This document shows positions 41,230-57,018 of a stretch of 64,000 nucleotides of DNA, piece by piece. Origin of the DNA: Setoptus koraiensis. Its lineage: Eukaryota > Animalia > Arthropoda. The position numbers and the translations under genes are program-made. A model generated the notes under the pieces. The model saw only the letters and a list, made by a program, of their open reading frames with translations. It ran no database searches and was not told the DNA's origin. The stretch lies in the NCBI GenBank assembly GCA_048013815.1, contig CM106585.1, positions 5,208,001 through 5,272,000 on the forward strand, written 5' to 3'. Numbering within the stretch: position 1 is the stretch's first letter; every line of letters starts with the position of its first letter.

Positions 41230-44200
41230 TTACTCTAACGCGATTTGTTCACTTTCTTCGTTCCTCCTAGACCATTCAATCAGCATCTCAGGCGATCTAT
41301 AAAGGAACAATAACTTTGAGAACAACTTCTCTTCTAGCTCGAACTGTCCGCACTCTCTCATCATGTATATGTCCATGATAAGTCCATATATTCTGTCTAC
41401 GTGAGGTATCTCCGAATAGATGACCTTACCGGATGGCTCTGTTCTTATGAGACGCGCGAAGAACACCACGAAGGTGGTATAAAGACCAATGATACCTGGC
41501 GCAGATAGAACAGCTAATATTCCTGTAAATATGCGATCGTTAAATGCTACAATCAACAAGCCACTGCAATGAGGAACTGCTGTCTCGCTCCAGAATGAAA
41601 AGGCGTCGGAATCATTTTGAAACTTGCACGGATCACTTGCCTGCCACCACGAAGTTGAACTGTCTGTTAAGTTTGTAGTCGGGTCAAATAATCTGATGTA
41701 GGATAATACTAAAGGTCTCATGGCTCCTGAGATGTTTTGATTGTTACTTATGTCATCCAGTTGGGTGGCTACTGTAGCTTGGCCAGATTCTGGTACACGA
41801 ATGAATTTCGGAAATATCGGTGGTGTCGTGACATTTACTGTGTTGTTCTCAGAGTCGGCCGATGTTGATGAATTGACTAGCATTTGTGCCAATTTAGTTC
41901 GAAATTCCAATATTGTATTATCTTGACTGTTATTCAATGCTAATGAATATGAACCAGCGATAGATATATCAATATTCTGAGATTTCTGTTTTTTGATTCT
42001 ATAAAAAGTCCAAGTAGATTTAAGAACAAGAGTGTCGTTCGATTTTATGTTTTCAATCAAACGCTTTTTGCTTGGCAAGGATATGCCCCAATCAGCTATT
42101 GATTGCCCATCCAACTGAATATAAGTCACGTCACCCACTTTGTAGTCACTCAAGAAACCTTGTGCTGCCAGTGAATCCTTAGCTTCTTTTAGTTGATTGT
42201 AATGTTCAGATGAAAGCGGTTTGATTGATTCTGTAGTAGCCCTCATGCGAATTATTGGTTGATATCCGACAAATTCTAATTCAAATTCCATCTCAATGGG
42301 AGGATTGCTCTCTCCAACTGATTTACCCATGGAGAATAGCAGAAGTGGCCCCCAAATTATCGCCAATATCAGCAGTATGAAAGAACCACCAGTGAGATAT
42401 TTCGACAGATCCGGTTGTGGTCTGGCTTTTGGTCTTGGGTATTCTTCTTCTAGTGTTAATTCGCACTTTCTTATGAACAGATTGGCAAACATATCTTCCA
42501 TTATTGCCCAATTTCTAAACTCCAAAGTTGTTTTGGTCCAAATCCAATCCATATACAATCTAAGATCATAGACGAGCGGGATGGCCCGATAAACTTTGAA
42601 GGCGCCCCAGTTTGTGTAACCGTAGCCTTTTGTAAAACAGTTTCCAAGAACCCGCTTAGGGTATCCACATCTTATCTGGTGTGCAGATAGCAAAAAGTAA
42701 ATACATTTGAATATATACCAAGCCTTGGGGGGCCAAGCTTGTTTCATTGTGGCAGAATGTCCGACTACGAATGGTAGTGCAAAAAATAACCAAAAGTGGA
42801 CGATGAAAATGAGTATAACCTGGAAGACCAATTTCGCTCCAATTTTCCTCTTTAGGTAGAACGCTCTGTCGAATATGATCGAGGCAAATTGAGCTAATAG
42901 CATGATAAGTACTGAGAAAGGTATTCTATTCTCGTCCAAAAAGCTGGTCACTGATTGATTTGTGTAAGCTCCTCCAAAAGCCCAAAATCCATATATTAGG
43001 ATTAGGAAATTGATGAAATCGCATAGAAACATCCAAGTGTAAACATCTGTTTGCACTCTGTATGGAGTGTTGAGAACATGTCGGAAGAAGGCCCCAATTG
43101 ATCTGGCCGAACGACTATAAGCTCTGGTGCAACAAGTACAACAAGAACTACAACACAATGAGTATTTGCGAAATTTTCTTCCAACGTCGTTCTTTTCAAG
43201 GTCTATCTCAGTAATGATGAAATCTTCATGCTGATAGGAATGCAAATGATCTGCGTCCTCACTATTCATAGCTATTTGCTGAATTTCAATCTGAGCATCT
43301 TCGGTCAATCGAACACTAGGAGATGGTTGTTCCATAAAATTCTGCACATTTGGACTAGATTGTGTCATCGGGCTCCTCGGTTTGCCGTCTTCAATGCTCA
43401 TCCCGTTCCACGAATCTCCACCCAGAGGCTCTGAGGCTGACCTCACATCGCCAATAGGAGGTGAAACGCTCATGTTATCTATGGCCAATGTTGAGGCACT
43501 TGTTGTTGTAGCATCCCATTGACCCAGGCTTTTAAGCATCGATCTATGAAAGAACAATGCTATTAGCAGAAACAAATCGTATGATATTGTTACATCTTTC
43601 ACACCGAACAAGGTTGGAAAATATAAAGGATTTGTGTTCGTGTAACTCCAGTTCCAAAGGGGAAACTGGAACACATATTTGACGACAATAACAATCTCTG
43701 TATAAGTTATGACAGTCTTCCAGAAGCGCTGGGTTGGTCTTGGCACACTCAGTGTTCCCCATAAGAACGTCAATAGTGGCAATGGAAGTGATAGGAGGCT
43801 CGATGTCACTAATTGATTCAAAATGATGATGATGTGACATAATAATGATGTGTTGGATATGAACAGATAACCTATGGCCCTGAGAAATTGAGTTGATATA
43901 TTAGTTTTTAGGAAGTGATACTCAGAATCGATAGATTCGAGAGGTGAGTTCTTGTCAGGCGAGCTTGCCCTCGAGGCAAATGTCACTTGAGGGGGTTGAC
44001 TAGATGCTGCGAAAGCCATCTGTTTAACTGCGGTGGTGCGATTATATGTTTCAGAAATTTTACTGATGACCACTTGTCGCCATAACGGATCGGACTTGAA
44101 TCGTGGATCCGACAGGTCAAATTGAGTTTTAAGAGTGGTCTTCTCCACTGCCATTCGTCTAGACACATAACGGTAGCTCCGGGATGCTTTGTTCAGAGCA

Positions 44201-46902
44201 ACTGTGGCACTTAGCAGACAACTATATATCAGTAGATTTAAAGTAGAGCAAAATCCTGTTGTGCTTTCATCGGTTTGATTGGCATGGTCATCAGTGCCTG
44301 GTTCTCCATCTGTAATGGGAGATTTAACTTGTTTGGTCAAATCCTGAGAGACATTGTTGTCCTTCCAATCAACTGTTTCATCAGCATCGCCAGCATCACT
44401 TCTCACAGAGCCTGGTGTATTTGGCGACGATGTGAAGCTATTTTGATGTGATGTAGGACCACTAGTCTGTTTGTACAGTTCTTGTCCTCTCATGTAGCGA
44501 CTAAATACTGCGTTAATACCATTGAGTTTTGCCATCCTCTCTAGTTCATCACCTATCGGATCTGGCACGAATTGCTCTTGTCTCGAGTTGAAGTAATTCT
44601 CGTTGTAGCTCACTGGAGTATAATTCAAACTTTCAAAGAGATGCTTATCTGCATTTCTTATTATCTGATGATGATGGGGCAACGTCATTAAAGTTCTCCA
44701 AGCCTCCGAGTTTGTCTGGTCAAATTTCAGATTCTCCATCTTCGCCTTTATGCTCTTCATCACCTCTTTTTCGACGGCCGCTTGCGCTTTCGCCTCTTCC
44801 ATTTGTGTGGCTAAAATCAACTCAGCTCCCCTAGAGGCTAATATCTTTTGAGCTTTGACTTCTTGTACAAGCTGGAGGAAATATTGACTTCCAAATACTA
44901 TTCGTTGAATCAACAAGAACAGCAGACATACACCATCCCATAGAAGATCAGATCCCTCATTTGGTAAAGAAGAGCATTGTGCTTGTTGCGCTGGTTGAAA
45001 TTTCTTGTAGCAGACAACTCTTAGCAGTTGCAATATATAGCAATTTGATAGGAGACTGTCGTAGTAATAACAAACAAATAACTGTAGGACTGTCTTGGCT
45101 GTGAGCACAAAAGTCACATAAAATATAAACCAATTCCAACGATTAATCAATTTTCTTGTTGGCATCAAATAGGCATCGTTTCCAAGCCATAAAAATATGA
45201 AACACCCTATGAGGTATCCCAATGAAAATAAGCTCACTTTTGTCGCACCAGCTACCAAAACTGCCGCCAATGTTATCCAATATATCGACATGAAGAAAGC
45301 TGACTTGAGAAAGTTATTTGGCGTGTTGAAGTTGGTGAAGCAATCCTCAGCTCGATATTCATCTGGACCAGGAAGATACGTGCTAAAAAATTGGCCAAGT
45401 TCATCATGGCGCTCGGGTTGATAGCCACGGGTACTGGACTGGTTGATACTTGTTGGTCTTGTGTTTTTGAACACTATCATTTGGCGACAGGCAGCTAAAA
45501 AGATCAAAAAATCGAAATACAAAAGATAAACTTGAGGATTGTTGTTGTAGTCAGATAGATATAACCATTGTCTAAAGTCCGCATTAATTTGATGCCAAGG
45601 GTAGGCTCTGCACAATAGTTTGGGAAATCCAAGCGCCAAAATGTACTGAACCGGTATGATAACACTCATCAAACATTGGAATAAAGGCCAGACTTTTGCA
45701 CAAAAATGTCTTGACGAAGAGGTGAATATAACTAGACATAGGCCATATAAGAAAGCTACAACATCTAGTCTGTTTGAAATGGCAAGCACGAGCGCCAGGC
45801 AGTTGAGTTCCAAACCAAATTTGTAAAATCCAACATTAAGAAAGTACATCAAGCTATTGATGATACTCTTATCTGCTTCCCTTCTTCCTATATTCTTGAA
45901 TATTATACCAAAGTTTAGTTCGATTTGGTCTAGAGTTGTTGGTTGGCGTCGCATTCGATGAATATCAATGAAAGAGTATATGGTTGTTAGGACTAGAACA
46001 ATAAGATATTGATAGATGTTGCTCAGCATGTATGTATCGGCGCCTTTGAAACCAATATAGTCAACCAAGCTATTAACGACACCTGTTGGTGGTGCCCCAG
46101 GTATAACTGGACATGTGGATGTAACATCAAGATTTGTGAAAATTGTCAATCTGTATGTCATTCTAGAGATTATAATGAGCCCACTGAGCAGCGAAGACAA
46201 CCGGGCCGTACATCTCTCCAGGGACGGGTATCGCAGAGCTAGTATTACTAGGAATACAAATGGTACATTGATGAGGCTTAAATCCGTTGTGGCCAATCTG
46301 AATACAAAGAAAAATGTTACTTTGATGTAATGCGTCTCTAATATTCTCCAAAGGCAATCACAAACTTTATCAATCTTGGAAACTTTATGATGTATTGAGT
46401 GTGACGAGTTCGCCGATGTCAATGGGGCGTCTAAATTTGGGTCCTCGTATTCATTGGCCAAATAGGCTAACCTTGTCAGGTCGTAATGAAAATACTTGAG
46501 ATATATGCATATGCAAGTTATAAATACCAATGGTACAAATAGTTGAAATAAAAGAGTTCCATAGCCGGACAATGTAGTTAGTCCTATATCGGCTATAAGA
46601 TTGTTTGGTAGTATAGATTTCCAGAAGGTCTCCCCAGTGGAATATTGGTAACTATATAGAGCTGTTATCACAATTGTAGAAAATAATATCAATAAAATGC
46701 AAAACAATTTAACAAATCTGGCCCAAATCCTGTATGATAATTGAAATAATAATAGAAAGGTAATGAAAAATATCATATAAACAATTCCGATAATATCTCC
46801 AGGGTGGACAGTTAATGTGATAGTGAGAGCCAATAAAGCTATAGTCCATATACAAAAATGAGCAGCTAATATGCGTTTCCTAACCATCCAATCGGAGGCC
46901 AT
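41230..46902 (-). CDS. Piezo: Piezo mechanosensitive channel, single exon, 1890 aa, beginning at THU4
   Basis: GFYKFGLE, TDVYTWMFLCDF, MDWIWTKTTL...EDMFANLF.RKC, KYLTGG, WGPLLLFS, GIIGLY, DRI...DIYMMRE and LLFLYRSPE. Confidence 0.97.
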   Translation of the reverse strand: MASDWMVRKRILAAHFCIWTIALLALTITLTVHPGDIIGIVYMIFFITFLLLFQLSYRIWARFVKLFCILLILFSTIVITALYSYQYSTGETFWKSILPNNLIADIGLTTLSGYGTLLFQLFVPLVFITCICIYLKYFHYDLTRLAYLANEYEDPNLDAPLTSANSSHSIHHKVSKIDKVCDCLWRILETHYIKVTFFFVFRLATTDLSLINVPFVFLVILALRYPSLERCTARLSSLLSGLIIISRMTYRLTIFTNLDVTSTCPVIPGAPPTGVVNSLVDYIGFKGADTYMLSNIYQYLIVLVLTTIYSFIDIHRMRRQPTTLDQIELNFGIIFKNIGRREADKSIINSLMYFLNVGFYKFGLELNCLALVLAISNRLDVVAFLYGLCLVIFTSSSRHFCAKVWPLFQCLMSVIIPVQYILALGFPKLLCRAYPWHQINADFRQWLYLSDYNNNPQVYLLYFDFLIFLAACRQMIVFKNTRPTSINQSSTRGYQPERHDELGQFFSTYLPGPDEYRAEDCFTNFNTPNNFLKSAFFMSIYWITLAAVLVAGATKVSLFSLGYLIGCFIFLWLGNDAYLMPTRKLINRWNWFIFYVTFVLTAKTVLQLFVCYYYDSLLSNCYILQLLRVVCYKKFQPAQQAQCSSLPNEGSDLLWDGVCLLFLLIQRIVFGSQYFLQLVQEVKAQKILASRGAELILATQMEEAKAQAAVEKEVMKSIKAKMENLKFDQTNSEAWRTLMTLPHHHQIIRNADKHLFESLNYTPVSYNENYFNSRQEQFVPDPIGDELERMAKLNGINAVFSRYMRGQELYKQTSGPTSHQNSFTSSPNTPGSVRSDAGDADETVDWKDNNVSQDLTKQVKSPITDGEPGTDDHANQTDESTTGFCSTLNLLIYSCLLSATVALNKASRSYRYVSRRMAVEKTTLKTQFDLSDPRFKSDPLWRQVVISKISETYNRTTAVKQMAFAASSQPPQVTFASRASSPDKNSPLESIDSEYHFLKTNISTQFLRAIGYLFISNTSLLCHIIIILNQLVTSSLLSLPLPLLTFLWGTLSVPRPTQRFWKTVITYTEIVIVVKYVFQFPLWNWSYTNTNPLYFPTLFGVKDVTISYDLFLLIALFFHRSMLKSLGQWDATTTSASTLAIDNMSVSPPIGDVRSASEPLGGDSWNGMSIEDGKPRSPMTQSSPNVQNFMEQPSPSVRLTEDAQIEIQQIAMNSEDADHLHSYQHEDFIITEIDLEKNDVGRKFRKYSLCCSSCCTCCTRAYSRSARSIGAFFRHVLNTPYRVQTDVYTWMFLCDFINFLILIYGFWAFGGAYTNQSVTSFLDENRIPFSVLIMLLAQFASIIFDRAFYLKRKIGAKLVFQVILIFIVHFWLFFALPFVVGHSATMKQAWPPKAWYIFKCIYFLLSAHQIRCGYPKRVLGNCFTKGYGYTNWGAFKVYRAIPLVYDLRLYMDWIWTKTTLEFRNWAIMEDMFANLFIRKCELTLEEEYPRPKARPQPDLSKYLTGGSFILLILAIIWGPLLLFSMGKSVGESNPPIEMEFELEFVGYQPIIRMRATTESIKPLSSEHYNQLKEAKDSLAAQGFLSDYKVGDVTYIQLDGQSIADWGISLPSKKRLIENIKSNDTLVLKSTWTFYRIKKQKSQNIDISIAGSYSLALNNSQDNTILEFRTKLAQMLVNSSTSADSENNTVNVTTPPIFPKFIRVPESGQATVATQLDDISNNQNISGAMRPLVLSYIRLFDPTTNLTDSSTSWWQASDPCKFQNDSDAFSFWSETAVPHCSGLLIVAFNDRIFTGILAVLSAPGIIGLYTTFVVFFARLIRTEPSGKVIYSEIPHVDRIYGLIMDIYMMRECGQFELEEKLFSKLLFLYRSPEMLIEWSRRNEESEQIALE

Positions 46903-48689
46903 GATTCTGCTGGTTATATTAGTAATAATAATAATAACAGTATTTGCTTATGGACAACCACGATAATAATATTATGATTATATTGGCGATAGTGATTATT
47001 ACGATGATTGTGAAGATTGAACACTTTCATCTGGGGGCAACTGGTTGTTGATATTATATAAATATATGGTGTTTAGGTTGCTACGTGTCTAGAAATTGAT
47101 TGATTGTGGTTATCCGGCTTGTTCAATATGTCTCTGTTCATCACCAGTAGAAATTCATATATTGTAAGTACATTGTAATGATGATAGTGATGATGATAAT
47201 AATAATAATAGTAATAAGATTAATAATGATAGCTGTTGTTTATCAAGATGATGACATTCAATAGTCACGATTGTCTGTTACTCGCAACCCCATGCAATCT
47301 ATGTGATGTCGCTAGTTTTCGTGAAAAACATAGACATGACTAATCATTAGTAGACGACATTAATAATGTGGTAGAAGAAAAAATTTTGTAAACACTTCAA
47401 GTTACATTCGCTCGCAGTTTGATCACCTTTGATGCTTCTTTTTTGATACTGCTTGCACTGCTGATGAACTGATAATTTAATTCGTGTTATCAATATTGAA
47501 TAATAATATTATCATATTATGATTCCTATTTAATTAATAATAATTTCTACAAATTCTAGTAGAGTTTTTAGCCGAACTGGCAGCGGTATATTTGATGCAG
47601 CGGCAACTCAACAACAACAACAACAATTGGATATTGTGAATACCATGCCACTGCTACAATATGATGGTGGTATGCTTAATGTCACTTGTGTGCTCACTCT
47701 TTTTTGTCTGTATGTCTGTCATACGATATATACCGTATATAATATACCTCGATGTATCAACTACATACTGCATTGTAAATTATAATACAGTATTGCTAAA
47801 TTTATGTTGCCTCATAGAGTAGATATTCTGTATATTGGCAGCAACAACTGTACTAATAATATACTTTATACCGCAGTATAATGACTTGTGATAAATCTGT
47901 ATCATCTAGTCGGCATAACAACATTTTCGCTAACAATATAAACAGACATGCACTCGATATACGGTGCAGAACATGCAAGAAAAAATCGGGCTTCGATCAA
48001 CAGTCTTTGATGCTACCATTGATTCACCGGTGCGGATATTAATAGTTTCTCTACTCTGCACCAATATACCCCTCCATCTCTCCGTGCAACTTGACTGTTG
48101 GTGCGAATAATTTACATTGCATCAGAACTGCTTTATCGATTTGAACTTCAGCATCATCCTTCATACTCAGAATTCATTTCACCAACGGCCTTGCCACTTG
48201 GGATATTCGTTTCTTTTCATATTCTCACAATAGATATGATTGCAAACATTGGCTGCCTTCTATCATCTCATTTACCTTTAGCGAACTTTATTCCTCGTAC
48301 GATTCAAAGACACCAGATTTACCCTCGAAATTGATCTGATTATCGGCAAAGCGGAAGTCTTCAAGTGATGAGCGGCTTCACCGAGATCTGATTACCGGAA
48401 CCACAGCGAGTTTTTTTGTTTGATATTCCACCAAGTTCAATTCAACAATAAACGATACACAATAATCTAATCAACGACTCATTTCTCACAACTAACTGAG
48501 GTAATAATAAGTTTCTATTGCCGCCCGACAGACGCATGCGTGAATGACGTTGAATCTGGATTGATACATCACGTAAATGATTCACAAAATATGGCGTCTT
48601 TTGCATGATATAAGTATCCATATGCACCGTTATGAGCATTAACAATTCATGAATCTCGTCCCGTTATGAGATATTTTTTCTATCCCGTT

Positions 48690-48703
48690 GTTTTTGCGGC
48701 AAC
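48690..48703. promoter_or_regulatory. Degenerate X-box-like motif upstream of CIB
   Basis: GTTTTTGCGGCAAC has a perfect GGCAAC half site but central GC instead of AT. It lies ~175 bp before the CIB ATG. Confidence 0.35.
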
Positions 48704-48870
48704 GCCCATGCCGAATAACGGCTTTAGTAAGAGTGACCCTATGGACCAGGTCACATCATAGTTGCTTAATCTACTTGCACATCGTTGAGTCGTTTAACTC
48801 GTCGCCGTTTATAGGGACAGATGGTTCGCAAAATAGTTATTGCAGTCAGTTCAGAGAGAAAACAAAGAAA

Positions 48871-49792
48871 ATGGGCAATAAGATAGCAACTTTCTCCGAT
48901 GAACAACTAGAGTGCTATCAGGATTGTACATATTTCACGAGGAAGGAGATTTTAATGTAAGTACACGATGTTTCATGTGCTCAATTGATACTGTCTCAAT
49001 TGCAAACTCATGTGACTAAAATGTTTTTAGAGAATTTTACCATTCATCATCACGTTGCCAGTGTATTCAAGCGCTTTCGTGAACTGGACTCGAATAGAAT
49101 TCAAAAAGTTATGTCGGATGAAGATTGCTCTTCAATTAAAGTATCCCATGACAAACTTGAAAAGATGGCTGAGCTGAAGGTAAGCGAAGGTGGTATAACT
49201 GTGTTAATGCCTAATTAGTGCAACTATAATCAATTATCGATCCTCCAAATAGGAAAATCCACTCAAAGAGAGAATTTGTAAAGTTTTCTCTGGCGATGAT
49301 AGTGGGGATATGACTTTCGATGATTTTCTCAACATGTGCTCCCTATTTAATGAGCAATCACCTAGGGATACAAAAATACATTATGCTTTCCAGATATATG
49401 GTAGGTTTTTAAACATATCTTCGGCTAGTATGCTTTGCAGCTTGTTACGGTAGTCGCAGTATATTCAAGTTTATCATCGCCTATTATCTAGATTATGATG
49501 AGGATGGCTTCATCGGAATGGAGGATCTCAAAAAGACGCTAGTAGCCTTGACGAAAAACCGATTAACTCAGGAAGAGGTCAGCGTCGTTTGCAATAAAGT
49601 TTTAGAGGAGGCAGATCATGATAATGATGGAAAAATATCCTTTCTTGAGTTCAAACACGTCGTTTCTAGATCACCGGACTTCATGAGGTAAGTTGGATGC
49701 GATTCGAATTCTTATCACAGTTTAAGTCAAAAGTTGGTTTGAACCACATGTTTATTTATATTCGTCTTAGCAACTTTCGCATGAGAATATAA
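48871..49792 (+). CDS. CIB2: Calcium- and integrin-binding protein CIB2/3, join(48871..48956,49062..49179,49253..49400,49492..49687,49771..49792), 189 aa
   Basis: MGNKIATFSDEQLECYQDCTYFTRKEIL, MAELKENPLKERICKVFS, EF-hands DYDEDGFIGMEDL and DHDNDGKISFLEF, and SPDFMSNFRMRI. All four GT-AG introns are phase-consistent. CIB2 cannot be distinguished from CIB3. Confidence 0.95.
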
Positions 49793-51109
49793 ATCAAGAG
49801 GATTCATTTGGAGGGACAAATTAGCTCAGTGCTCATTCAGTTATTCATCTTGAACAGTTCAATCCATCTAGTCATCAACGTCTGTGTCTGTCACCCGTAT
49901 CATTAAATCAACTTACTTTAAGAATAAAATTTCAACTCGATTCCAAACTTCTCGAACTGTCACAAGAATGCTCCACGCCGCGGAGCATTGTTGCGTTGCG
50001 ATGGCCCATTGCTAACGGCGCGTCGAATCGTAGGCAAATAGTTTTTGTGTGTGTCGCACTAATCTCATTCTAGAGTCAAGCTGTTTTGAAATTTATGCAA
50101 ATATTGAAGCCAACTTACACTCATTTACTCGCTTTGGAAACAGATCGTTACTGTTGTTGATGCGCAATGACCTCAGGCAAGCAGCTAATGGGATGAATTT
50201 TCCTCTATCGATATTCCGGGAATTTTGTTTATTGTTTGTATCAAAAATGTCGACACGGAACACTTCCTATGTCCTTGATAACAATTTTCTCATTGGTTCT
50301 ACTCTATTGCTGCGTCCAACCGATCATCAGATCACCTGTTGCGGACTTGGTAGCTGCGACCAATCTCCTTCGTTTCTGTTGTACACATAGCGCCCCTAGT
50401 CTCGTGCAAACTAACAAGGGAACATCGGATAAATCGCCCAGCGTCTGTTATTGTCTGAGTCTTGCTATTCGAGTCGCAAGTCAGACACTCATGAGCTCGA
50501 AGGGACAATTCTATTTAGAATATTTTGTTTATATTTATCACTGCAACTCGTTGTAGGTGATCATCTATTTATCCATGCAACGGAAAATTGTTTCTTTTTT
50601 GCGTAGTAACATGAACCGAGATTCTATATAGCTCATATTGTCAATGATCATTTTTATGTTGTCGCAAGTTGACTTTTGCATTACACAATTTCGTCGCGTT
50701 GAAAACGCACACAAATAAATCAACATCGATTGCATCATTTAAGTGCAGTTCATAAAATCACGACCTTTCCATATATTTATTGCCTTTAAATTATTATTAT
50801 TATTAAATAATTATTCCGCCACAAAGAGTGATCCGCGATCATGTTCAAGCAGACACAATCAAGCATCAATGACACATTCTGTAGTTACTTAACAAAATGC
50901 GCTGTCATTACGCATCGTGCTGTATTGTGAGGATAAACAACAGCATGAAAAATGGGCCAACAGCCATTCGTTCCATTAGCAACACCATTATATGCCAGCC
51001 TATTTTACACTATTGTAAACTCTCATGTATTACACAATTTTTTGTGCGTGTTGGTCCTCACTGGGAAAACCTACACATCAAATTACCTGTACTTGTACTG
51101 TTGTGTATT

Positions 51110-51720
51110 ATGAGGAGCCACTGCTGGGGAACTATATTCCTTTGTTTTGCTATTGTTTCGGGTGAAGACTAGGCCGGCAAGCGTTATATAGAAGCACAAC
51201 AGTTATTACGAAACGTAATAATTATACGAGATAACGATGATCACGTGTTAACTAACAAGGTAAAGCTCATTCCAGATGACAGTAGATCGACTGCCCTGGT
51301 CAGGCTCAGCAAGGTATGAAGGTTCGAAAGGTCTATCAAAAACTGGGAAAACGAACAGTTTCTGCAATAATTGCTATTTTCTGAAATAATTTCATGAATT
51401 CGCTCGTGCCGCAGGCCTGTTTACTACGAGCCATTCGTCCGTTATTTGCAAAATTTTTCATTTTATTAATTTTTAATTATCTATTTTGTGCGGTTGCTGC
51501 TCCATAAATAGGCGAATGAGCATGATAAAACTACTTTTGAGGCTAGATATCTCAAAGGTAGGGCATTGTCTACAAGGAGAGGGGTTACGTTCTCACAAGG
51601 AACGTGACACAGTTCAAGAAGGCCAAAGTCGAGTTGGATTCAAGGCCATGCCGAGGAAGGGGTGTTTACTTCGTTGGCAACGACGCAAAATGGTACGAAA
51701 TGAAACCAAAACTGCTCTAA
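51110..51720 (+). CDS. Predicted small secreted cationic protein, join(51110..51161,51276..51313,51562..51720), 82 aa
   Basis: Signal-like exon MRSHCWGTIFLCFAIVS. The phase-1 (GTGAAG...TTCCAG) and phase-0 (GTATGA...GGTAG) introns are compatible. Last exon GIVYKERGYV...KWYEMKPKLL-stop; AATAAA at ~51993. Not present in the ORF track. Confidence 0.5.
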
Positions 51721-52092
51721 AAATTCAGACACGCTATTCTCTACTTGTCAGCAAGACTTGTGAGAGATATAATGTTATAAGGGCCATTTAAAATTCGTTG
51801 TAATCAATCGTATCATCAGGAAATATAGTATTCAATATTATTGGTTCATTCCACCTATAATTGATGACTGCTAAAATGACAATTGGCAAACGTGGCAAAA
51901 CCGAGAGTAATGCAAACTTGAAGGCGATGAAGAAGCGTTCTGTTAGAAGTCCAAGATCAATACGCGATGTAGCGCCAATGTATCAACATGCAATAAAATT
52001 CAAGTTTGTTTTATTTCGATAGAATAGATAATCATCGATGATATAAGATGAGGAATGATGATAGGTATAGAGATATACTGATTGATAGCAGC

Positions 52093-52967
52093 TCAGTCCT
52101 TCTTAGAGTATGGTCCTCCCCATGTGGCCGGTGCCCCATTGAGTGCGAAACCGGCGCTCTTGTCCGATGCCAGATACTTAGCAACGTTGGGTAGTGCCTT
52201 GACGCGAGCGTGGTAATTCTTCAAGCTCTCAAATGCGTCCAATACTGTAGGTTCAAGCACTAGCTGCTGATCTAAAAATTCATATAGTATGAAGTCGACA
52301 TAGGTGACGTAATCGCCAGCTAAAAATGGTCGGCTGCCAAGGAAGTCAGCGAGGCTTTTTAGCTTGGCTGGCAATTCCTTGAGGTAGTCAACCTTTAGTT
52401 CATGAAAGTCTGGCTTGTAGCACATCATGGCAAATTGATATCTGTAATCATGAACTTGCTGTTCAGCCAGGTCGGTACGCAATCTGTCGGCATCGTTGCG
52501 GGCGTCCAAATTGTATTTGCGAGCCACGTAGCGCATGATGGTCAACGATTGGGTCAATTTGACATCGCCATCAATTAAATAGGGCAAATTGGGAAAGTCC
52601 AGACCGTGTGTGAATTTTTCGTTGAGCCATTCGCTTCTGTCGAATGTGGGCGGTGGTCCGCAGTTGTAGAGTTTGTCGGTGAACTCGACTCCGGCTTGAG
52701 CCAACAAGAGACGAATCGATTGGGCCAACTATGGGATCGGGGGCGTTGGAACAACAAGACACAAGGCACAGATTGATGGTGTTAGTTAGCGGTCGGTTAG
52801 TAGCCAGTGGAGATTGTGGGCCAGAGTCAGTAGTGGACACAGAGCCACCGATTGACACGCAGTCACCGATTGACAAAGAATGATAATTGTTCATTGTGAG
52901 ACATTGAGCAGTTGTGTTGCGTAATACTTACACCGCGAATGCCCCAGTATCCTAGTGTGACTGGCAT
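52093..52967 (-). CDS. GSTM: Glutathione S-transferase mu class, join(52967..52932,52728..52093), 223 aa
   Basis: Exon 1 MPVTLGYWGIRG (donor GTAAGT at 52931) joins LAQSIRLLL. Mu-loop GPPPTFDRSEW, LDFPNLPYLIDG, TQS and FLAGDYVTYVDF. Confidence 0.97.
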
Positions 52968-53397
52968 GATGATTGAATGATGGGCAAATTGTTATTTTAT
53001 TTAAAAGATGGATGAGCTGTGATTTAATTTTCAGATTGATTGGTGGTTGAATGGCGATGACAGTTGACGACTGTTGCTGACAATTGCTGGCTGTTACACT
53101 GACGATTAACGGATAAACGAGAAAGTTTTATACGATGCGACACGAGGCAAAAGCACGAATGTAATGAGAGAAGCCCACAAGTGTGGCCGCAAACTGATGG
53201 GTGTGGTGCCAGTGAACAGGCTGTGCGCAAAGGGTTCTGTGCCGGCGAGCGTCAGTGTGCCTGATTCCTGCTCCACTGTGTACCTATAATATTGGCGTAT
53301 TTTTAGCAGCACTCAACCAGCACCGACAACGCACTAAGTAACGCACGCACTGTGCACTAGTGTGGTACCGAGCGCACCGGCAACACGTTGTGCACCG

Positions 53398-53399
<2 letters not shown>

Positions 53400-53444
<45 letters not shown>
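53400..53444. repeat. (CA)~22 microsatellite
   Basis: Read directly from the sequence. Further (CA)n runs lie at ~6234-6253 and ~14365-14405. Confidence 0.95.
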
Positions 53445-53446
<2 letters not shown>

Positions 53447-56400
53447 ACAGTGTAACATCGTCTGTCAAAAGTTCGAGAAAGATCTTTCGCGCTGTTTTCG
53501 TCCGGAGGGGGGCGATTTGTATTGCATACTGCGGTTGTCGTTGTCCTGTCGAATGTGCACATTGGGATGTACTAACGAGTACAAGCTCGTTAGTCATTCT
53601 GCAGCAACTGCTCGTTGTTTGGCCGACGTCACACGGCCCTGGCCGCCAAAGTGAGAACTTGGACTTTTTTGGCGAACGGAACACGCCAAGAAACAGGCTC
53701 CGGCAATGTGCACCTGCAGTTTGGAATTTGAAAGAAAATTCCTAGCTATTCTAGGTACAGAAAGAACGAGTTACATAACTATTTTTAGAAGAGACTATTG
53801 TGTGCAATGTAAAGTGGCTGCCAATGAGAGTCTCTCCGTTTGTCTAGTGTTTAGCGCGAGGTTACATAGTGCTGGCAACAAGCGCACAACAAAAGGCTTG
53901 TTCTTGGGCTAGCGTTAGCTGTTATCTGGCGTTCTTTGGGCCAACAATGTGAGACAGGCTAGTTGTGGATGAGGTGAGAACAACAAAGAGCTCCTATGTG
54001 TACATTGCGCCCTATAACGATACACAATAAGCACAAACAGTACAGGTGCATCATTATTATCTGGCATTATTGCTTGGCATTACTTCATTATCAAGGCCAA
54101 CCACATTACCTTTTTGGAGATATTGTGTGTGTGTGTCTGCTGCCAGCACATTGCCAGTGCCAATTAAGCGTCTGACGTGACATAATATACTGTACTCGTA
54201 CACACACACACACACATATATAGTACAGTATCTGTATATAAATTATGGCTCAACAACAATCATGCGGAGACAAACAGAATGGGAAGGACATAAGATGGCA
54301 ACAAGCAAAGAAATCTCTCAATAGCTGCGAATTTGCTGCCGCTGCCAAACTTTCTCGCTATTCATCGTACCTTTTCACTGGCTGTTGCTTTCGACGAGGC
54401 CATCGGACAGCCACTCTGACAAGTACACGATTTTCGGGCTCAACCATCGCAAGTTAACTTGCAATTATTCGAAGTTCGAACACACCAATCGACTGTCAAA
54501 ACGAGCGCCATCCTGTGCAACATCCATTGGCGCACTATCGGTTTCTATATGCCAATGCCAAGCGACGCTAATGCGAGCTGCCAGCAACGTAACTCGCAAA
54601 GCTCGTCAACGATATGACTCATATCCACTTTACAGATACACTTCTCTGACTTGCTAAACAACGACTTTACATATGAATCAATTAGCGAACCATTTTAGAC
54701 ACTAGAGTGACACATTAGTGATTTATTAGTAGGGTTTAATTCGTTGATTTACAATGCATCTTTTCATTGATTATGTACATTTGTTTCATGACATCTTTCA
54801 TCATCGACTTACAAGAGGCCAAGTCAACATTTGTCTATTATAGCGACCCGTGTGCTGCGGGATGTTCTTCCGAAGGCCCCAGACCCCGTTCAAAATAATC
54901 CGCTAGAGGCGCCACCATCCTTGAAATATGTGCGGCCAAAGGCAGCTTGTTCCATTTAATATTTTCTCTCTTCGATTGCTCCAAATCTATTTGCGCATTG
55001 TCTATAGCCAGTTCGCCATCACGCCCATAACTACTCATCGTGGTCGACTGCCACTCGCTTATAGAAAGCCGAGTGGCGCTGCCCTGTAGGATTTTTTTAA
55101 AACTAGATGTAAGGGCATTGGGAAGACCTCACACAATACACGTTTATGTCAGAGACTGTTGATGCATCCTATGTATCAACTTGTTATTTGTGGCGAGAGT
55201 AATTCTTTTTTTCAAATCTATCTCATTATTCTGATACGAAATTCGAAAGGTTCTGGTCCTCTAGAAACACGTCCTCTGTGTGGATTATCTGTGTTGGTTG
55301 CCTTCTTCCGCCGGAACAACTTTTGGCGCCAATCTTTAGGGCCCCACCATGTTTTTCTGGAGCTGGACCCTCCACAATATGTAGAACTTGTCAAAACTCA
55401 TCTAACAATACTAGGTTCGCCGATATAGGAGCGAATGTACTGGACTGAAAATGAAAAAAAAAACATCAAATGTGCCTCAAAATGCATGGAATAAGTTCCG
55501 GATATCAAGAGACGATATGGCACGTCAAATGCCTAGTTGGCGTTCCACTTTGCTCTATCAATCAGTATAATGAATCAATACCTGTACAAATACATCGTAT
55601 AGAGATCCAGATTGTCGGATTGTGGTAATGGCTCAGTGATCATTCATAGTCTTAGTCAAGAGAGATAATTGACTACTGTTGCGGTAGTTGAACTCACAGC
55701 AGCAGAAACATACACATCTGTTTGGATGTCACTTTATAGAAAGAATTGTGAGAATACCCTACGAATTTTTATACTTGCTCTTACATAATCACGCTAATAT
55801 GGAGGCGACACGCTTCAGAACTCTTTTCGTCGGTGGCGTGTATTTTTCTTTTCATTTTCATGCAACTTTTGCTTCTAGAGTTGAAACTACAGTAGTAAAA
55901 TGAAAGAATTGCTCACACGATGGAGTGTTTTATAGTCGCAATTAGAATTCGATATAAATGCTTACTCAAATACAACTCTTCATGGTCTCTCGCTACATTG
56001 GGTTCTATATCTATCTAATACATGTCGCGTCGCGTCGTGTTCGTAGTCTACTTTCAAGCCGTCTGCTATACAAGTATGCATCTTGCTTCGTGCTTCATTA
56101 TTGTCTCAGTTCGAATAATGCATGACTAATGCCCAGACAACGCTCTAAAATCTCAAGGTCAAACTACCCTTTCGCCATGTATTCCTTCTATTCTGATTGT
56201 ATGTTAGCTCGGTTTTCAGTTTAAAGATTTCATTGAGATTTTGTCATCACATTGACACTGCGGCAAAAGTAATGCTTATAGATGGGGTCAACAGAAAAAA
56301 GAGTCAAGACTTTCGTTGAGACGATATTGGTTGCACAAAATTTCCATATTGTGTGTTCACTGTGGTAATTGTTGGTTTTTCAACCGCAAATTTATTCAGT

Positions 56401-57018
56401 TTTCTGTTTTCCGCATAAGTGAGGAGCCTTTCGGAACAATTGTCCAATATAACTAGAAAACAGTCCAGTCAGATGACTACGAAGAATAGATTTTCAGGGA
56501 TTAGAGAAGTACACTTTCTTGAAGCAAACTTTTCGTAACTGTAGTTCAACATTCAATCTAGATGCTCGTCACATGAATATTTTCTCCCCTTCCGATGGGC
56601 CCTCGGAATCACCCTCGGCAACTTTTCTATATCGATTCCTCGACCTTATCAACGAATTGAGGTAAATTTGTAAGGTATTTTTCTCAGTTAATTTTCTTGG
56701 GGAGCAGTCCTGACATTCACCCTCCTACGTTGTATCTTATGTTATTGTACACTTGGTAGTATGCGCCTCTTCCTCGACTAAAAATACTCCATGGAATATA
56801 AATCGTTGCTCACTCAAACTGGCGAGATAGAAAATAGATGATAAGATCAATGGGATATGTGAATATTTCGTGTTCTCCTTTAGTACGAAACAAACGTCAG
56901 TTAAGCAGCTAATAGTACTAGTCTTTACATTGGCAGATTGGAAATCAATTTATTGTAGCTGACAAAATCAGTGGCCCAAGCGCGAAGAAATTTTGCCTGA
57001 ATCTTGCCGGTCATTGTA

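What the first reader, a model, noticed from the sequence alone, without database searches (positions are those of the whole stretch)
41230..46902. Short-bladed Piezo: the protein starts at THU4 and lacks the three distal blade units
Seen: the 1890-aa ORF starts MASDWMVRKRILAAHFCIWTIALL...IVYMIFF, which aligns with the fourth 4-TM unit of remembered vertebrate Piezo1 (WIYVCAGMF...KIVYMFLF). THU5-9, beam, anchor, cap and pore follow. An in-frame stop lies ~50 nt upstream, only 1968 nt separate the ATG from the divergent CIB ATG, and no Piezo-like hydrophobic minus-strand ORF occurs in the remaining 17 kb. Established: full Piezos have 38 TM in nine units, and blade length sets membrane-dome curvature and tension sensitivity. 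Inference: a natural ~26-TM minimal Piezo with a smaller membrane footprint.
Basis: partly seen in the sequence, partly recalled or inferred. Interest (0 to 1): 0.8.

Follow-up and report, generated by a model that had tools for sequence, protein, structure and literature searches.

The report
Short-bladed Piezo channel of gall mites
This tiny plant mite, like at least 18 related genes from its relatives, encodes a touch-sensing Piezo channel that starts one third of the way in and lacks the three outermost units of each arm, so it is a natural test of how much arm the channel needs.

Summary
Window 41230-46902 (-) is one uninterrupted 1890-aa Piezo ORF. Its first residues align to the fourth 4-helix unit (THU4) of mouse, fly and worm Piezos, and THU5-9, beam, anchor, cap and pore follow.

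The short form is not a local accident. Eighteen other proteins of 1691-2060 aa, one from the eriophyoid mite Fragariocoptes setiger, form one clade with it. Fifteen, plus the F. setiger genomic ORF, carry the same start motif (M..(I/V)RKRNLLAH).

In four other species with 10 kb of upstream sequence, or in F. setiger only 0.6 kb, the flanking genes differ and sit close. One species has an in-frame stop one codon before the ATG.

A THU1-3 profile finds nothing in the 64-kb window or those loci, yet it detects vertebrate and nematode THU1-3 at E 1e-60 to 1e-114. dN/dS against the closest relative is 0.047.

I conclude, at about 0.8, that the gene encodes a six-unit, about 26-helix Piezo fixed in Eriophoidea's germline (superfamily Eriophyoidea).

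It is not the first short Piezo. The C. elegans isoform PEZO-1K lacks THU1-4 and engineered PIEZO2-ΔTHU1-3 lacks the same units; both work. A lineage-wide gene of this form appears unreported.

Still missing: transcript 5' ends (no RNA runs exist), a whole-genome THU1-3 scan, and electrophysiology.

The parts
41230..46902 (-). Complete intronless Piezo ORF of 1890 aa plus stop codon
46900..46902 (-). ATG start codon, conserved as the first Met of the family motif M..(I/V)RKRNLLAH
   Evidence: Alignment A2; upstream in-frame stops in the window, L001, L002 and L005
46453..46902 (-). THU4 (aa 1-150; four TM helices, equivalent to TM13-16 of full-length Piezos)
   Evidence: Aligns to mouse Piezo1 605-717, fly 589-717 and worm PEZO-1G 637-781. 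AF2 pLDDT is 73-90 here, with helices 2-32, 37-55, 57-86 and 114-151.
45343..46452 (-). THU5 and THU6 (aa 151-520; eight TM helices)
   Evidence: Colinear alignment to fly Piezo 801-1190 and Piezo2 932-1317; hydropathy and AF2 helices
44623..45342 (-). THU7 and beam (aa 521-760; contains the ILASRGAEL beam motif)
   Evidence: Pfam Piezo_TM25-28 at aa 531-740; alignment
43513..43902 (-). THU8 (aa 1001-1130)
   Evidence: Pfam THU_Piezo1 at aa 1015-1130
42331..43050 (-). THU9, anchor and outer helix (aa 1285-1524). The anchor motif reads PLVYDLRLYMDW.
   Evidence: Pfam Piezo_THU9_anchor, full profile 1-238; motif
41233..42330 (-). Cap, inner pore helix and C-terminal domain (aa 1525-1890)
   Evidence: Pfam Piezo_cap at aa 1561-1879; alignment to mouse 2087-2547
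46903..48870 (.). 1968-nt region between the Piezo ATG and the divergent EF-hand gene ATG. It holds an in-frame TAA at 46948-46950 and acceptor-like AGs at 46910-46911 and 46907-46908. It holds no Piezo-like ORF.
48871..49691 (+). Divergently oriented multi-exon EF-hand (CIB-like) gene, which bounds the Piezo upstream region
52093..52728 (-). GST gene on the same strand as Piezo, the next minus-strand gene upstream

Best explanation
The window carries the Piezo mechanosensitive channel gene of an eriophyoid (gall or rust) mite. Translation starts at the ATG at 46902. The product holds only the six proximal transmembrane helical units (THU4-9, 24 helices) plus beam, anchor, outer helix, cap, inner helix and C-terminal domain. 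That gives about 26 TM helices instead of 38. The three distal units THU1-3 (about 570 residues in other animals) were lost from the gene in the common ancestor of the sampled eriophyoid mites. Removing whole 4-helix units keeps the N-terminus cytoplasmic and keeps the topology. Inferred, not shown: the protein still trimerises into a three-bladed channel with shorter blades and a smaller membrane footprint, and it still gates mechanically. C. elegans PEZO-1K (THU5-9) and engineered mouse PIEZO2-ΔTHU1-3 behave this way.
For: (1) The ORF and its domain content are confirmed.

(2) Colinear alignment to solved Piezos places aa 1 at about mouse Piezo1 residue 569, fly 577 and worm 622. PEZO-1K equals PEZO-1G minus its first 756 residues and is described as lacking THU1-4 (PMC12951647). 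The mite therefore keeps exactly one more unit, THU4.

(3) Eighteen homologues of 1691-2060 aa form one clade with the window protein (SH-aLRT 100), with a deep internal split. Fifteen of them start at a conserved Met plus the RKRNLLAH motif. The genomic ORF of Fragariocoptes setiger carries the same motif.

(4) Upstream neighbours differ between species and lie close: CIB-like at 1968 nt here, Img2 at about 850 nt (L002), a WD40 gene at about 1.1 kb (L005) and NDUFB7 at about 1.4 kb (L007). In L002 an in-frame TGA sits one codon before the ATG.

(5) A THU1-3 HMM and tblastn find only noise in the window and in L001, L002, L005, L006 and L007. A pancrustacean-only version of that HMM detects vertebrate and nematode THU1-3 at E 7e-60 to 3e-114, and detects nearly every 80-aa slice.

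(6) dN/dS against the 94%-identical orthologue is 0.047 overall and 0.11 in THU4.

(7) A word search of 5.8 billion proteins with a THU1-3 alignment gave 28 hits. The two on long contigs that I checked are exons of multi-exon full-length genes of other animals, and none looks eriophyoid.

(8) Eriophyoid genomes are about 84% intronless (PMC7738191), so a 5.7-kb single-exon gene is expected there.

(9) Function without distal blades has precedent (PMC12951647; bioRxiv 10.1101/2024.04.06.588398).
Against: No transcript evidence is available, because no listed holder of this DNA is on record as RNA. An acceptor-like site (T-rich tract, CTAAT, AG) lies 5-8 nt before the ATG. In Aculops lycopersici, 5' introns are the ones preferentially retained (PMC7738191). 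A 5' UTR intron is therefore quite possible, and a coding upstream exon is not formally excluded for this species. Only 64 kb of this genome was searched, so a separate THU1-3 gene or a second, full-length Piezo elsewhere cannot be excluded. Engineered mouse PIEZO1-ΔTHU1-3 gave no indentation-evoked currents (bioRxiv 10.1101/2024.04.06.588398), so function of a six-unit Piezo is not guaranteed. The AlphaFold model of aa 1-560 was low confidence apart from THU4 (mean pLDDT 56).
Confidence: 0.8

Rival explanations
1. The ORF is only the large last exon of a normal full-length Piezo gene. Exons for THU1-3 lie further upstream, beyond the CIB-like and GST genes or outside the window, and are spliced to the acceptor-like site just before the ATG.
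For: An acceptor-like sequence precedes the ATG. Eriophyoid mites preferentially keep 5' introns (PMC7738191). The in-frame TAA lies upstream of that acceptor. No RNA data are available.
Against: No THU1-3 signal appears in 17 kb upstream or anywhere else in the window. None appears in 10 kb upstream in three other species, and the control shows that the profile is sensitive. The initiator Met is conserved in 15 homologous proteins and in the F. setiger genomic ORF. In L002 a TGA sits one codon before the ATG, so a coding exon could join only exactly at the ATG. Upstream gene neighbours differ between species and are tightly packed. The close relative has non-triplet indels just upstream of the ATG.
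Confidence: 0.06
2. The Piezo gene is split. THU1-3 survive as a separate gene elsewhere in the genome, and their product assembles non-covalently with this protein to rebuild a full blade.
For: Only 64 kb of the genome could be examined. Other notes from this scan, which I did not check, report possible split genes in this genome.
Against: The word search with a 12-sequence THU1-3 alignment over proteins of 326-1038 aa returned no eriophyoid-like ORF, although the same collection holds the short Piezos of at least 15 related species. The metagenome scan found no THU1-3 locus from the sample that holds the mite contig L002, although that scan used only one peptide pattern. No other note in this genome mentions Piezo.
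Confidence: 0.05
3. This is a short paralogue, for example a retrocopy of a short isoform, that coexists with a canonical full-length Piezo elsewhere in eriophyoid genomes. The animal would then not depend on a short-bladed channel alone.
For: The gene is intronless. C. elegans makes long and short isoforms from one gene (PMC12951647). The genome outside the window was not searched.
Against: The search over lengths of 1040-3300 aa returned no longer eriophyoid-like Piezo. Outside the short clade, every hit is at most 30% identical and is either named (crustacean, insect, vertebrate, nematode) or comes from an unnamed Logan assembly. The THU1-3 search found none either. The only F. setiger Piezo among the hits is the short one.
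Confidence: 0.08
4. The ORF is a decaying remnant of a 5'-truncated gene and no longer has channel function.
For: The gene lost its 5' part. Mouse PIEZO1-ΔTHU1-3 is non-functional in a poking assay (bioRxiv 10.1101/2024.04.06.588398).
Against: The 5.7-kb frame is intact. dN/dS is 0.047, with dN of zero across THU9, anchor and outer helix. The full-length short frame is kept in 19 divergent proteins. The pore, anchor and cap score 200-280 bits against Pfam.
Confidence: 0.01

Closest known systems
C. elegans PEZO-1 isoform K (PDB 9UOX/9ZIT; Bell et al., Cell Rep 2025, PMC12951647)
   Same: [quoted passage not shown] PEZO-1K is mechanically gated, with a threshold similar to the full-length isoform. 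The mite protein aligns to it at E 3e-166.
   Different: PEZO-1K lacks THU1-4 (22 TM), whereas the mite protein lacks THU1-3 (about 26 TM). PEZO-1K is one of several isoforms of a gene that also makes the full-length PEZO-1G. The mite form is the whole gene, fixed across a superfamily, and no long form was detected.
Engineered mouse PIEZO2-ΔTHU1-3 and PIEZO1-ΔTHU1-3 (Sarrio-Ferrandez et al., bioRxiv 10.1101/2024.04.06.588398)
   Same: The same three units are removed. PIEZO2-ΔTHU1-3 keeps a normal threshold, gives larger currents and inactivates slightly more slowly.
   Different: These are laboratory deletions of vertebrate channels. The PIEZO1 version gave no currents, so the outcome depends on context. 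The mite protein has had a long time to adapt to the loss (stem branch 2.6 changes per column).
Canonical 38-TM animal Piezos (mouse Piezo1 5Z10/6B3R, Piezo2 6KG7, fly Piezo 9W7X)
   Same: The alignment is colinear from THU4 to the C-terminus (E 1e-224 to 3e-249). The beam motif, anchor, cap and inner helix are conserved.
   Different: About 570 N-terminal residues (THU1-3) are missing. The clade also carries its own changes at the anchor motif (PF..E......W becomes PL..D......W) and below the inner helix (IMF[ED][ED] becomes VIY[ST]E).

Membership tests
Piezo mechanosensitive channel family | C-terminal pore module: anchor, outer helix, cap (CED), inner helix and CTD | tested here: met
   Pfam Piezo_THU9_anchor 282 bits over the full profile and Piezo_cap 208 bits. 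Residues 1400-1883 align end to end with mouse 2087-2547.
Piezo mechanosensitive channel family | Beam helix following THU7 | tested here: met
   Pfam Piezo_TM25-28 at aa 531-740. The ILASRGAEL motif aligns with fly and Piezo2.
Piezo mechanosensitive channel family | Blade built of repeated 4-TM helical units (THUs) | tested here: met
   THU_Piezo1 and the other Pfam hits. Hydropathy and AF2 helices fall in groups of four.
Piezo mechanosensitive channel family | Canonical count of nine THUs and 38 TM helices | tested here: not met
   Only THU4-9 are present. The N-terminus maps to about mouse residue 569. No THU1-3 sequence was found in the window or in related loci.
Piezo mechanosensitive channel family | Anchor motif PF(x2)E(x6)W. 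The motif definition is recalled from the literature and was not re-read here. | tested here: inconclusive
   The motif is present as PLVYDLRLYMDW, with F changed to L and E to D. This variant is conserved in 17 of 20 short-clade proteins; F. setiger and P0006 keep E.
Piezo mechanosensitive channel family | Homotrimeric, mechanically gated cation channel | not testable with these tools
   Requires expression, patch-clamp and cryo-EM.
Naturally N-terminally shortened Piezo (PEZO-1K type) | Lacks distal blade units but retains THU5-9, beam and pore | tested here: met
Naturally N-terminally shortened Piezo (PEZO-1K type) | Produced as an alternative isoform of a gene that also encodes the full-length protein | tested here: not met
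   No upstream THU1-3 exons were found in the window or in four other species' loci with 10 kb of upstream sequence. Transcripts were not available.

The most novel reading that the evidence does not exclude
Eriophyoid mites are among the smallest arthropods. They may rely on a six-unit, about 26-helix Piezo as their only Piezo channel, fixed since before the split of their main lineages. This would be in-vivo, evolutionary-scale proof that the distal third of the blade is dispensable. It would also suggest that blade length, and with it membrane footprint, can be tuned by selection, possibly in step with extreme cell and body miniaturisation and the wider domain shedding noted in this genome.
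Probability: 0.45. Interest if true: 0.7.

Novelty: new variant of a known kind. Interest (0 to 1): 0.6.

Why it matters
The leading model of Piezo gating holds that the long curved blades dome the membrane and sense tension by flattening, so blade length should matter. Laboratory deletions give conflicting answers: PIEZO2-ΔTHU1-3 works and PIEZO1-ΔTHU1-3 does not. The one natural short form known, worm PEZO-1K, coexists with a full-length isoform. A whole animal lineage whose Piezo gene encodes only THU4-9 and is under strong purifying selection offers two things. It gives at least 19 diverged, pre-adapted short-blade sequences for expression, electrophysiology and cryo-EM. It also gives a case for asking what compensates for the lost distal blade, for example the clade-specific anchor and pore-exit substitutions. 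At 1890 aa the protein is smaller than canonical Piezos, which may help structural and biophysical work.

Tried and rejected
(1) RNA evidence. The look-up of sequencing runs found only DNA-type Logan contigs and no RNA holder. Read laying therefore showed only that independent assemblies are colinear across 46300-52200, with no joints.

(2) A recurrent weak tblastn hit of crustacean N-termini at 53867-53986 (-) had E 0.7-2.9. I rejected it because the queries are near-copies of each other, the HMM did not recover it, and it lies in a (CA)n-rich stretch without ORFs.

(3) The AlphaFold2 model of aa 1-560 with a 16-sequence alignment had mean pLDDT 56. Only THU4 was confident. I used it only to count helices and ran no fold search on it.

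(4) The metagenome scan with the THU1-3 alignment used a single peptide pattern. Its negative result for the mite-bearing sample is weak.

(5) The listing of cluster members gave no organism names for the Logan-derived homologues. The only taxonomic anchor is F. setiger.

(6) PDB chain 8ZU8 (1952 aa of human PIEZO1) starts within about 7 residues of the mite N-terminus. Its paper describes full-length constructs (PMC12266723), so I do not count it as an engineered truncation.

(7) The Pfam hit of aa 13-141 to the last 130 positions of 'Piezo_TM1-24' at first suggested THU6. Alignments to solved structures show that this segment is THU4, so I did not use the Pfam family name for unit assignment.

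Full report
**Observation**

The window holds one uninterrupted minus-strand ORF at 41230-46902, 1890 codons long and starting with ATG. Pfam assigns it five Piezo families far above their curated cut-offs:
- Piezo_THU9_anchor, 282 bits, full profile
- Piezo_cap, 208 bits
- Piezo_TM25-28, 167 bits
- THU_Piezo1, 140 bits
- the last 130 positions of Piezo_TM1-24, 73 bits

The in-frame stop is a TAA 15 codons (48 nt) upstream. The divergent EF-hand (CIB-like) gene starts at 48871, so 1968 nt separate the two ATGs. The next minus-strand gene upstream is a GST at 52093-52728. Independent DNA assemblies cover the ORF start and its upstream region colinearly. X1 spans 46300-52200 in one contig and X3/X4 span 46300-49247, so the short 5' end is not an assembly artefact.

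**Which unit the protein starts with**

phmmer against all PDB chains gives colinear alignments:
- aa 37-148 to mouse Piezo1 605-717 (envelope 576-728)
- aa 13-140 to fly Piezo 589-717
- aa 39-146 to mouse Piezo2 712-820
- aa 16-1147 to C. elegans PEZO-1G 637-1752

PEZO-1K (PDB 9UOX, 1686 aa) equals PEZO-1G minus its first 756 residues (offsets). Its authors describe it as lacking THU1-4 (PMC12951647). The mite protein extends about 120 residues further N-terminal than K, which is exactly one more 4-helix unit, THU4.

PIEZO1 cryo-EM models resolve THU4-9 only (stated in bioRxiv 10.1101/2024.04.06.588398 and PMC12951647). The region they resolve matches the extent of the mite protein.

Hydropathy and a partly confident AlphaFold2 model show three groups of four helices before the Pfam TM25-28 hit. 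The model has pLDDT 73-90 in THU4 and is poor elsewhere. The architecture is therefore THU4-9 plus outer and inner helix, about 26 TM helices.

The Pfam name 'TM1-24' is misleading here. The structural alignments show that the matched tail of that profile is THU4.

**Is the start real, or just the edge of a big exon?**

Five lines of evidence say it is real.

1. A word-indexed search and an exhaustive HMMER search found 18 other proteins of 1691-2060 aa that are 37-94% identical. One comes from Fragariocoptes setiger, of Eriophyoidea, family Phytoptidae. Fifteen of them start at a Met followed by a conserved motif, consensus M(D/E)SY.NL.CIIRKRNLLAH. R8 and K9 of the window protein are invariant. 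The F. setiger genomic ORF contains MAHTWALRKRNLSAH. A Met conserved at that spot is expected for an initiator and not for the first residue of an internal exon.

2. The loci differ in their upstream neighbours, and these lie close:
   - CIB-like gene here, at 1968 nt
   - Img2 about 850 nt away in L002
   - a WD40 gene about 1.1 kb away in L005
   - NDUFB7 about 1.4 kb away in L007

   In L002 an in-frame TGA lies one codon before the ATG.

3. tblastn with 26 full-length N-termini and a 560-position THU1-3 HMM give only noise in the whole window and in L001, L002, L005, L006 and L007 (best E 0.04-0.4). As a control I rebuilt the HMM from pancrustacean sequences only. It detected vertebrate and nematode THU1-3 at E 7e-60 to 3e-114 and detected nearly every 80-aa slice. 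Exons of that size would have been seen.

4. In the 94%-identical relative, the sequence just upstream of the ATG carries non-triplet indels, while the ATG and the coding sequence stay aligned.

5. For comparison, other compact genomes show THU1-3 directly adjacent to the rest of the gene, either in the same ORF (L008, L009) or across short introns (L014, L015).

**Is it functional?**

Nei-Gojobori dN/dS against the orthologue in L001 is 0.047 overall. It is 0.11 in THU4, and dN is zero across THU9, anchor and outer helix. The frame is intact in all 19 clade members.

A maximum-likelihood tree puts the 19 short proteins on one side of a branch with SH-aLRT 100 and a stem of 2.6 changes per column. 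Inside that group, the window protein, P0001 and F. setiger form one subclade and the other 16 form the other. The truncation is therefore best read as a single event before the deepest sampled eriophyoid split.

**Mechanism**

Shown here:
- The gene encodes THU4-9 plus the complete pore module.
- Removing whole 4-helix units keeps an even helix count. The basic RKR stretch before the first helix fits a cytoplasmic N-terminus.

Inferred:
- The protein trimerises into a propeller with blades one third shorter and a smaller footprint, and it is gated by membrane tension or indentation.

Precedents:
- PEZO-1K (THU5-9) gives indentation-evoked currents with a threshold like the full-length isoform (PMC12951647).
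- Mouse PIEZO2-ΔTHU1-3 keeps its threshold and gives larger currents. Mouse PIEZO1-ΔTHU1-3 gives none (bioRxiv 10.1101/2024.04.06.588398).

The clade has its own substitutions at two positions:
- The anchor motif PF..E......W reads PL..D......W. In the alignment the E corresponds to mouse residue 2133.
- The stretch after the inner helix reads VIY[ST]E where other Piezos have IMF[ED][ED].

From memory of mouse mutagenesis work, both positions are linked to conductance and selectivity. I do not know whether the substitutions compensate for the lost blade.

Origin is also inference. About 84% of genes are intronless in Aculops lycopersici, and this is attributed to reverse-transcriptase-mediated intron loss (PMC7738191). 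A 5'-truncated cDNA, or a short-isoform transcript that replaced the gene, would explain both the missing introns and the missing 5' part. A simple 5' deletion would also fit.

**What remains open**

No RNA run holds this DNA. The acceptor-like site 5-8 nt before the ATG may therefore mark a 5' UTR intron, and 5' introns are the ones these mites tend to keep (PMC7738191).

Only this 64-kb window of the genome could be searched. A separate THU1-3 gene or a second full-length Piezo elsewhere is made unlikely, but is not excluded, by these results:
- A word search of 5.8 billion proteins with a THU1-3 alignment gave 28 hits, none eriophyoid-like. Only the 8000 candidates sharing most words were scored.
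- A one-pattern metagenome scan found nothing from the mite-bearing sample.
- No other note in this genome mentions Piezo.

**Comparison and novelty**

The protein is a member of the Piezo family by every sequence criterion except the canonical count of nine units. Short natural and engineered Piezos are already published, so the idea of a short-bladed Piezo is not new.

What I found no report of is a germline-fixed ΔTHU1-3 Piezo gene shared by a whole superfamily. The full-text search for 'Piezo' with 'eriophyoid' gave only irrelevant hits, and the A. lycopersici genome paper does not mention Piezo. I class it as a new variant of a known kind.

Other notes from this scan, which I did not check, list several other domain-lacking proteins in this genome: integrin, delta-COP, Miro and UNC-45. 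The Piezo truncation may therefore be part of a general shedding of protein modules in these miniaturised animals.

Noticed in passing
window 46453-46902 (first 150 codons) compared with the rest of the ORF: Synonymous divergence from the close relative rises along the gene. dS is 0.28 in THU4 and 0.50 in THU5-6, against 0.70-0.93 downstream. The upstream non-coding 350 nt is also about 80% identical. This may reflect a regulatory or mRNA-structure constraint at the 5' end, or a shared bidirectional promoter region.
   Followed up: partly
window 48866-48963 (first exon of the EF-hand/CIB-like gene): A second contig in runs X1, X3/X4 and X7 matches this exon at about 90% identity. In X7 it runs straight on into sequence that encodes the next exon (VFKRFRELDS). 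In X1 its depth is the same as the genome's. This suggests an intron-lacking paralogue of the CIB-like gene elsewhere in the genome.
   Followed up: no
window aa 1442-1453 (about 42544-42579) and the segment after the inner helix (about 41400-41470): The clade carries its own substitutions at functionally studied Piezo positions. The anchor motif reads PLVYDLRLYMDW, where other animals have PF..E......W. The segment after the inner helix reads VIY[ST]E, where others have IMF[ED][ED]. Both are conserved across nearly all short Piezos.
   Followed up: partly
window 49700-52090 and 52900-57000: These two stretches have no convincing ORF on either strand. They include (CA)n-type repeats near 53.4 kb and raised G+C (0.47) at 52-54 kb. 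Both stretches are unusually long for a genome with median intergenic spacers of about 0.5 kb.
   Followed up: no
L006 626-6526 (Fragariocoptes setiger JAIFTH010000422.1): The deposited 'partial' Piezo protein (P0015) replaces the first three helices of THU4 with a polar segment. The genomic ORF itself runs uninterrupted through MAHTWALRKRNLSAH..., with about 115 further open polar codons upstream. The annotation therefore probably mis-models the 5' end, and F. setiger may carry a longer cytoplasmic N-terminal tail.
   Followed up: partly
P0022 (Homarus americanus, 2242 aa), plus ORF fragments P0162 and P0185: The lobster gene model and several single-ORF fragments from other arthropods also begin at the THU3/THU4 boundary. 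This hints at a conserved exon boundary or an alternative start there, which could have been the ancestral source of the mite's short form.
   Followed up: no
L008 324-5015 and L009 451-5016 (metagenome contigs): These are single uninterrupted ORFs of more than 1500 codons that run from Piezo TM1 through THU7 and beyond in unidentified organisms. They are intron-free full-length Piezos and serve as useful comparators for the mite gene.
   Followed up: partly
Pfam PF24871 (Piezo_TM1-24) hit at aa 13-141: The last 130 positions of this 682-position profile align to the segment that solved structures place in THU4 (TM13-16). No Pfam family covers aa 150-530 (THU5-6). The family's name therefore overstates what the profile covers.
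   Followed up: partly
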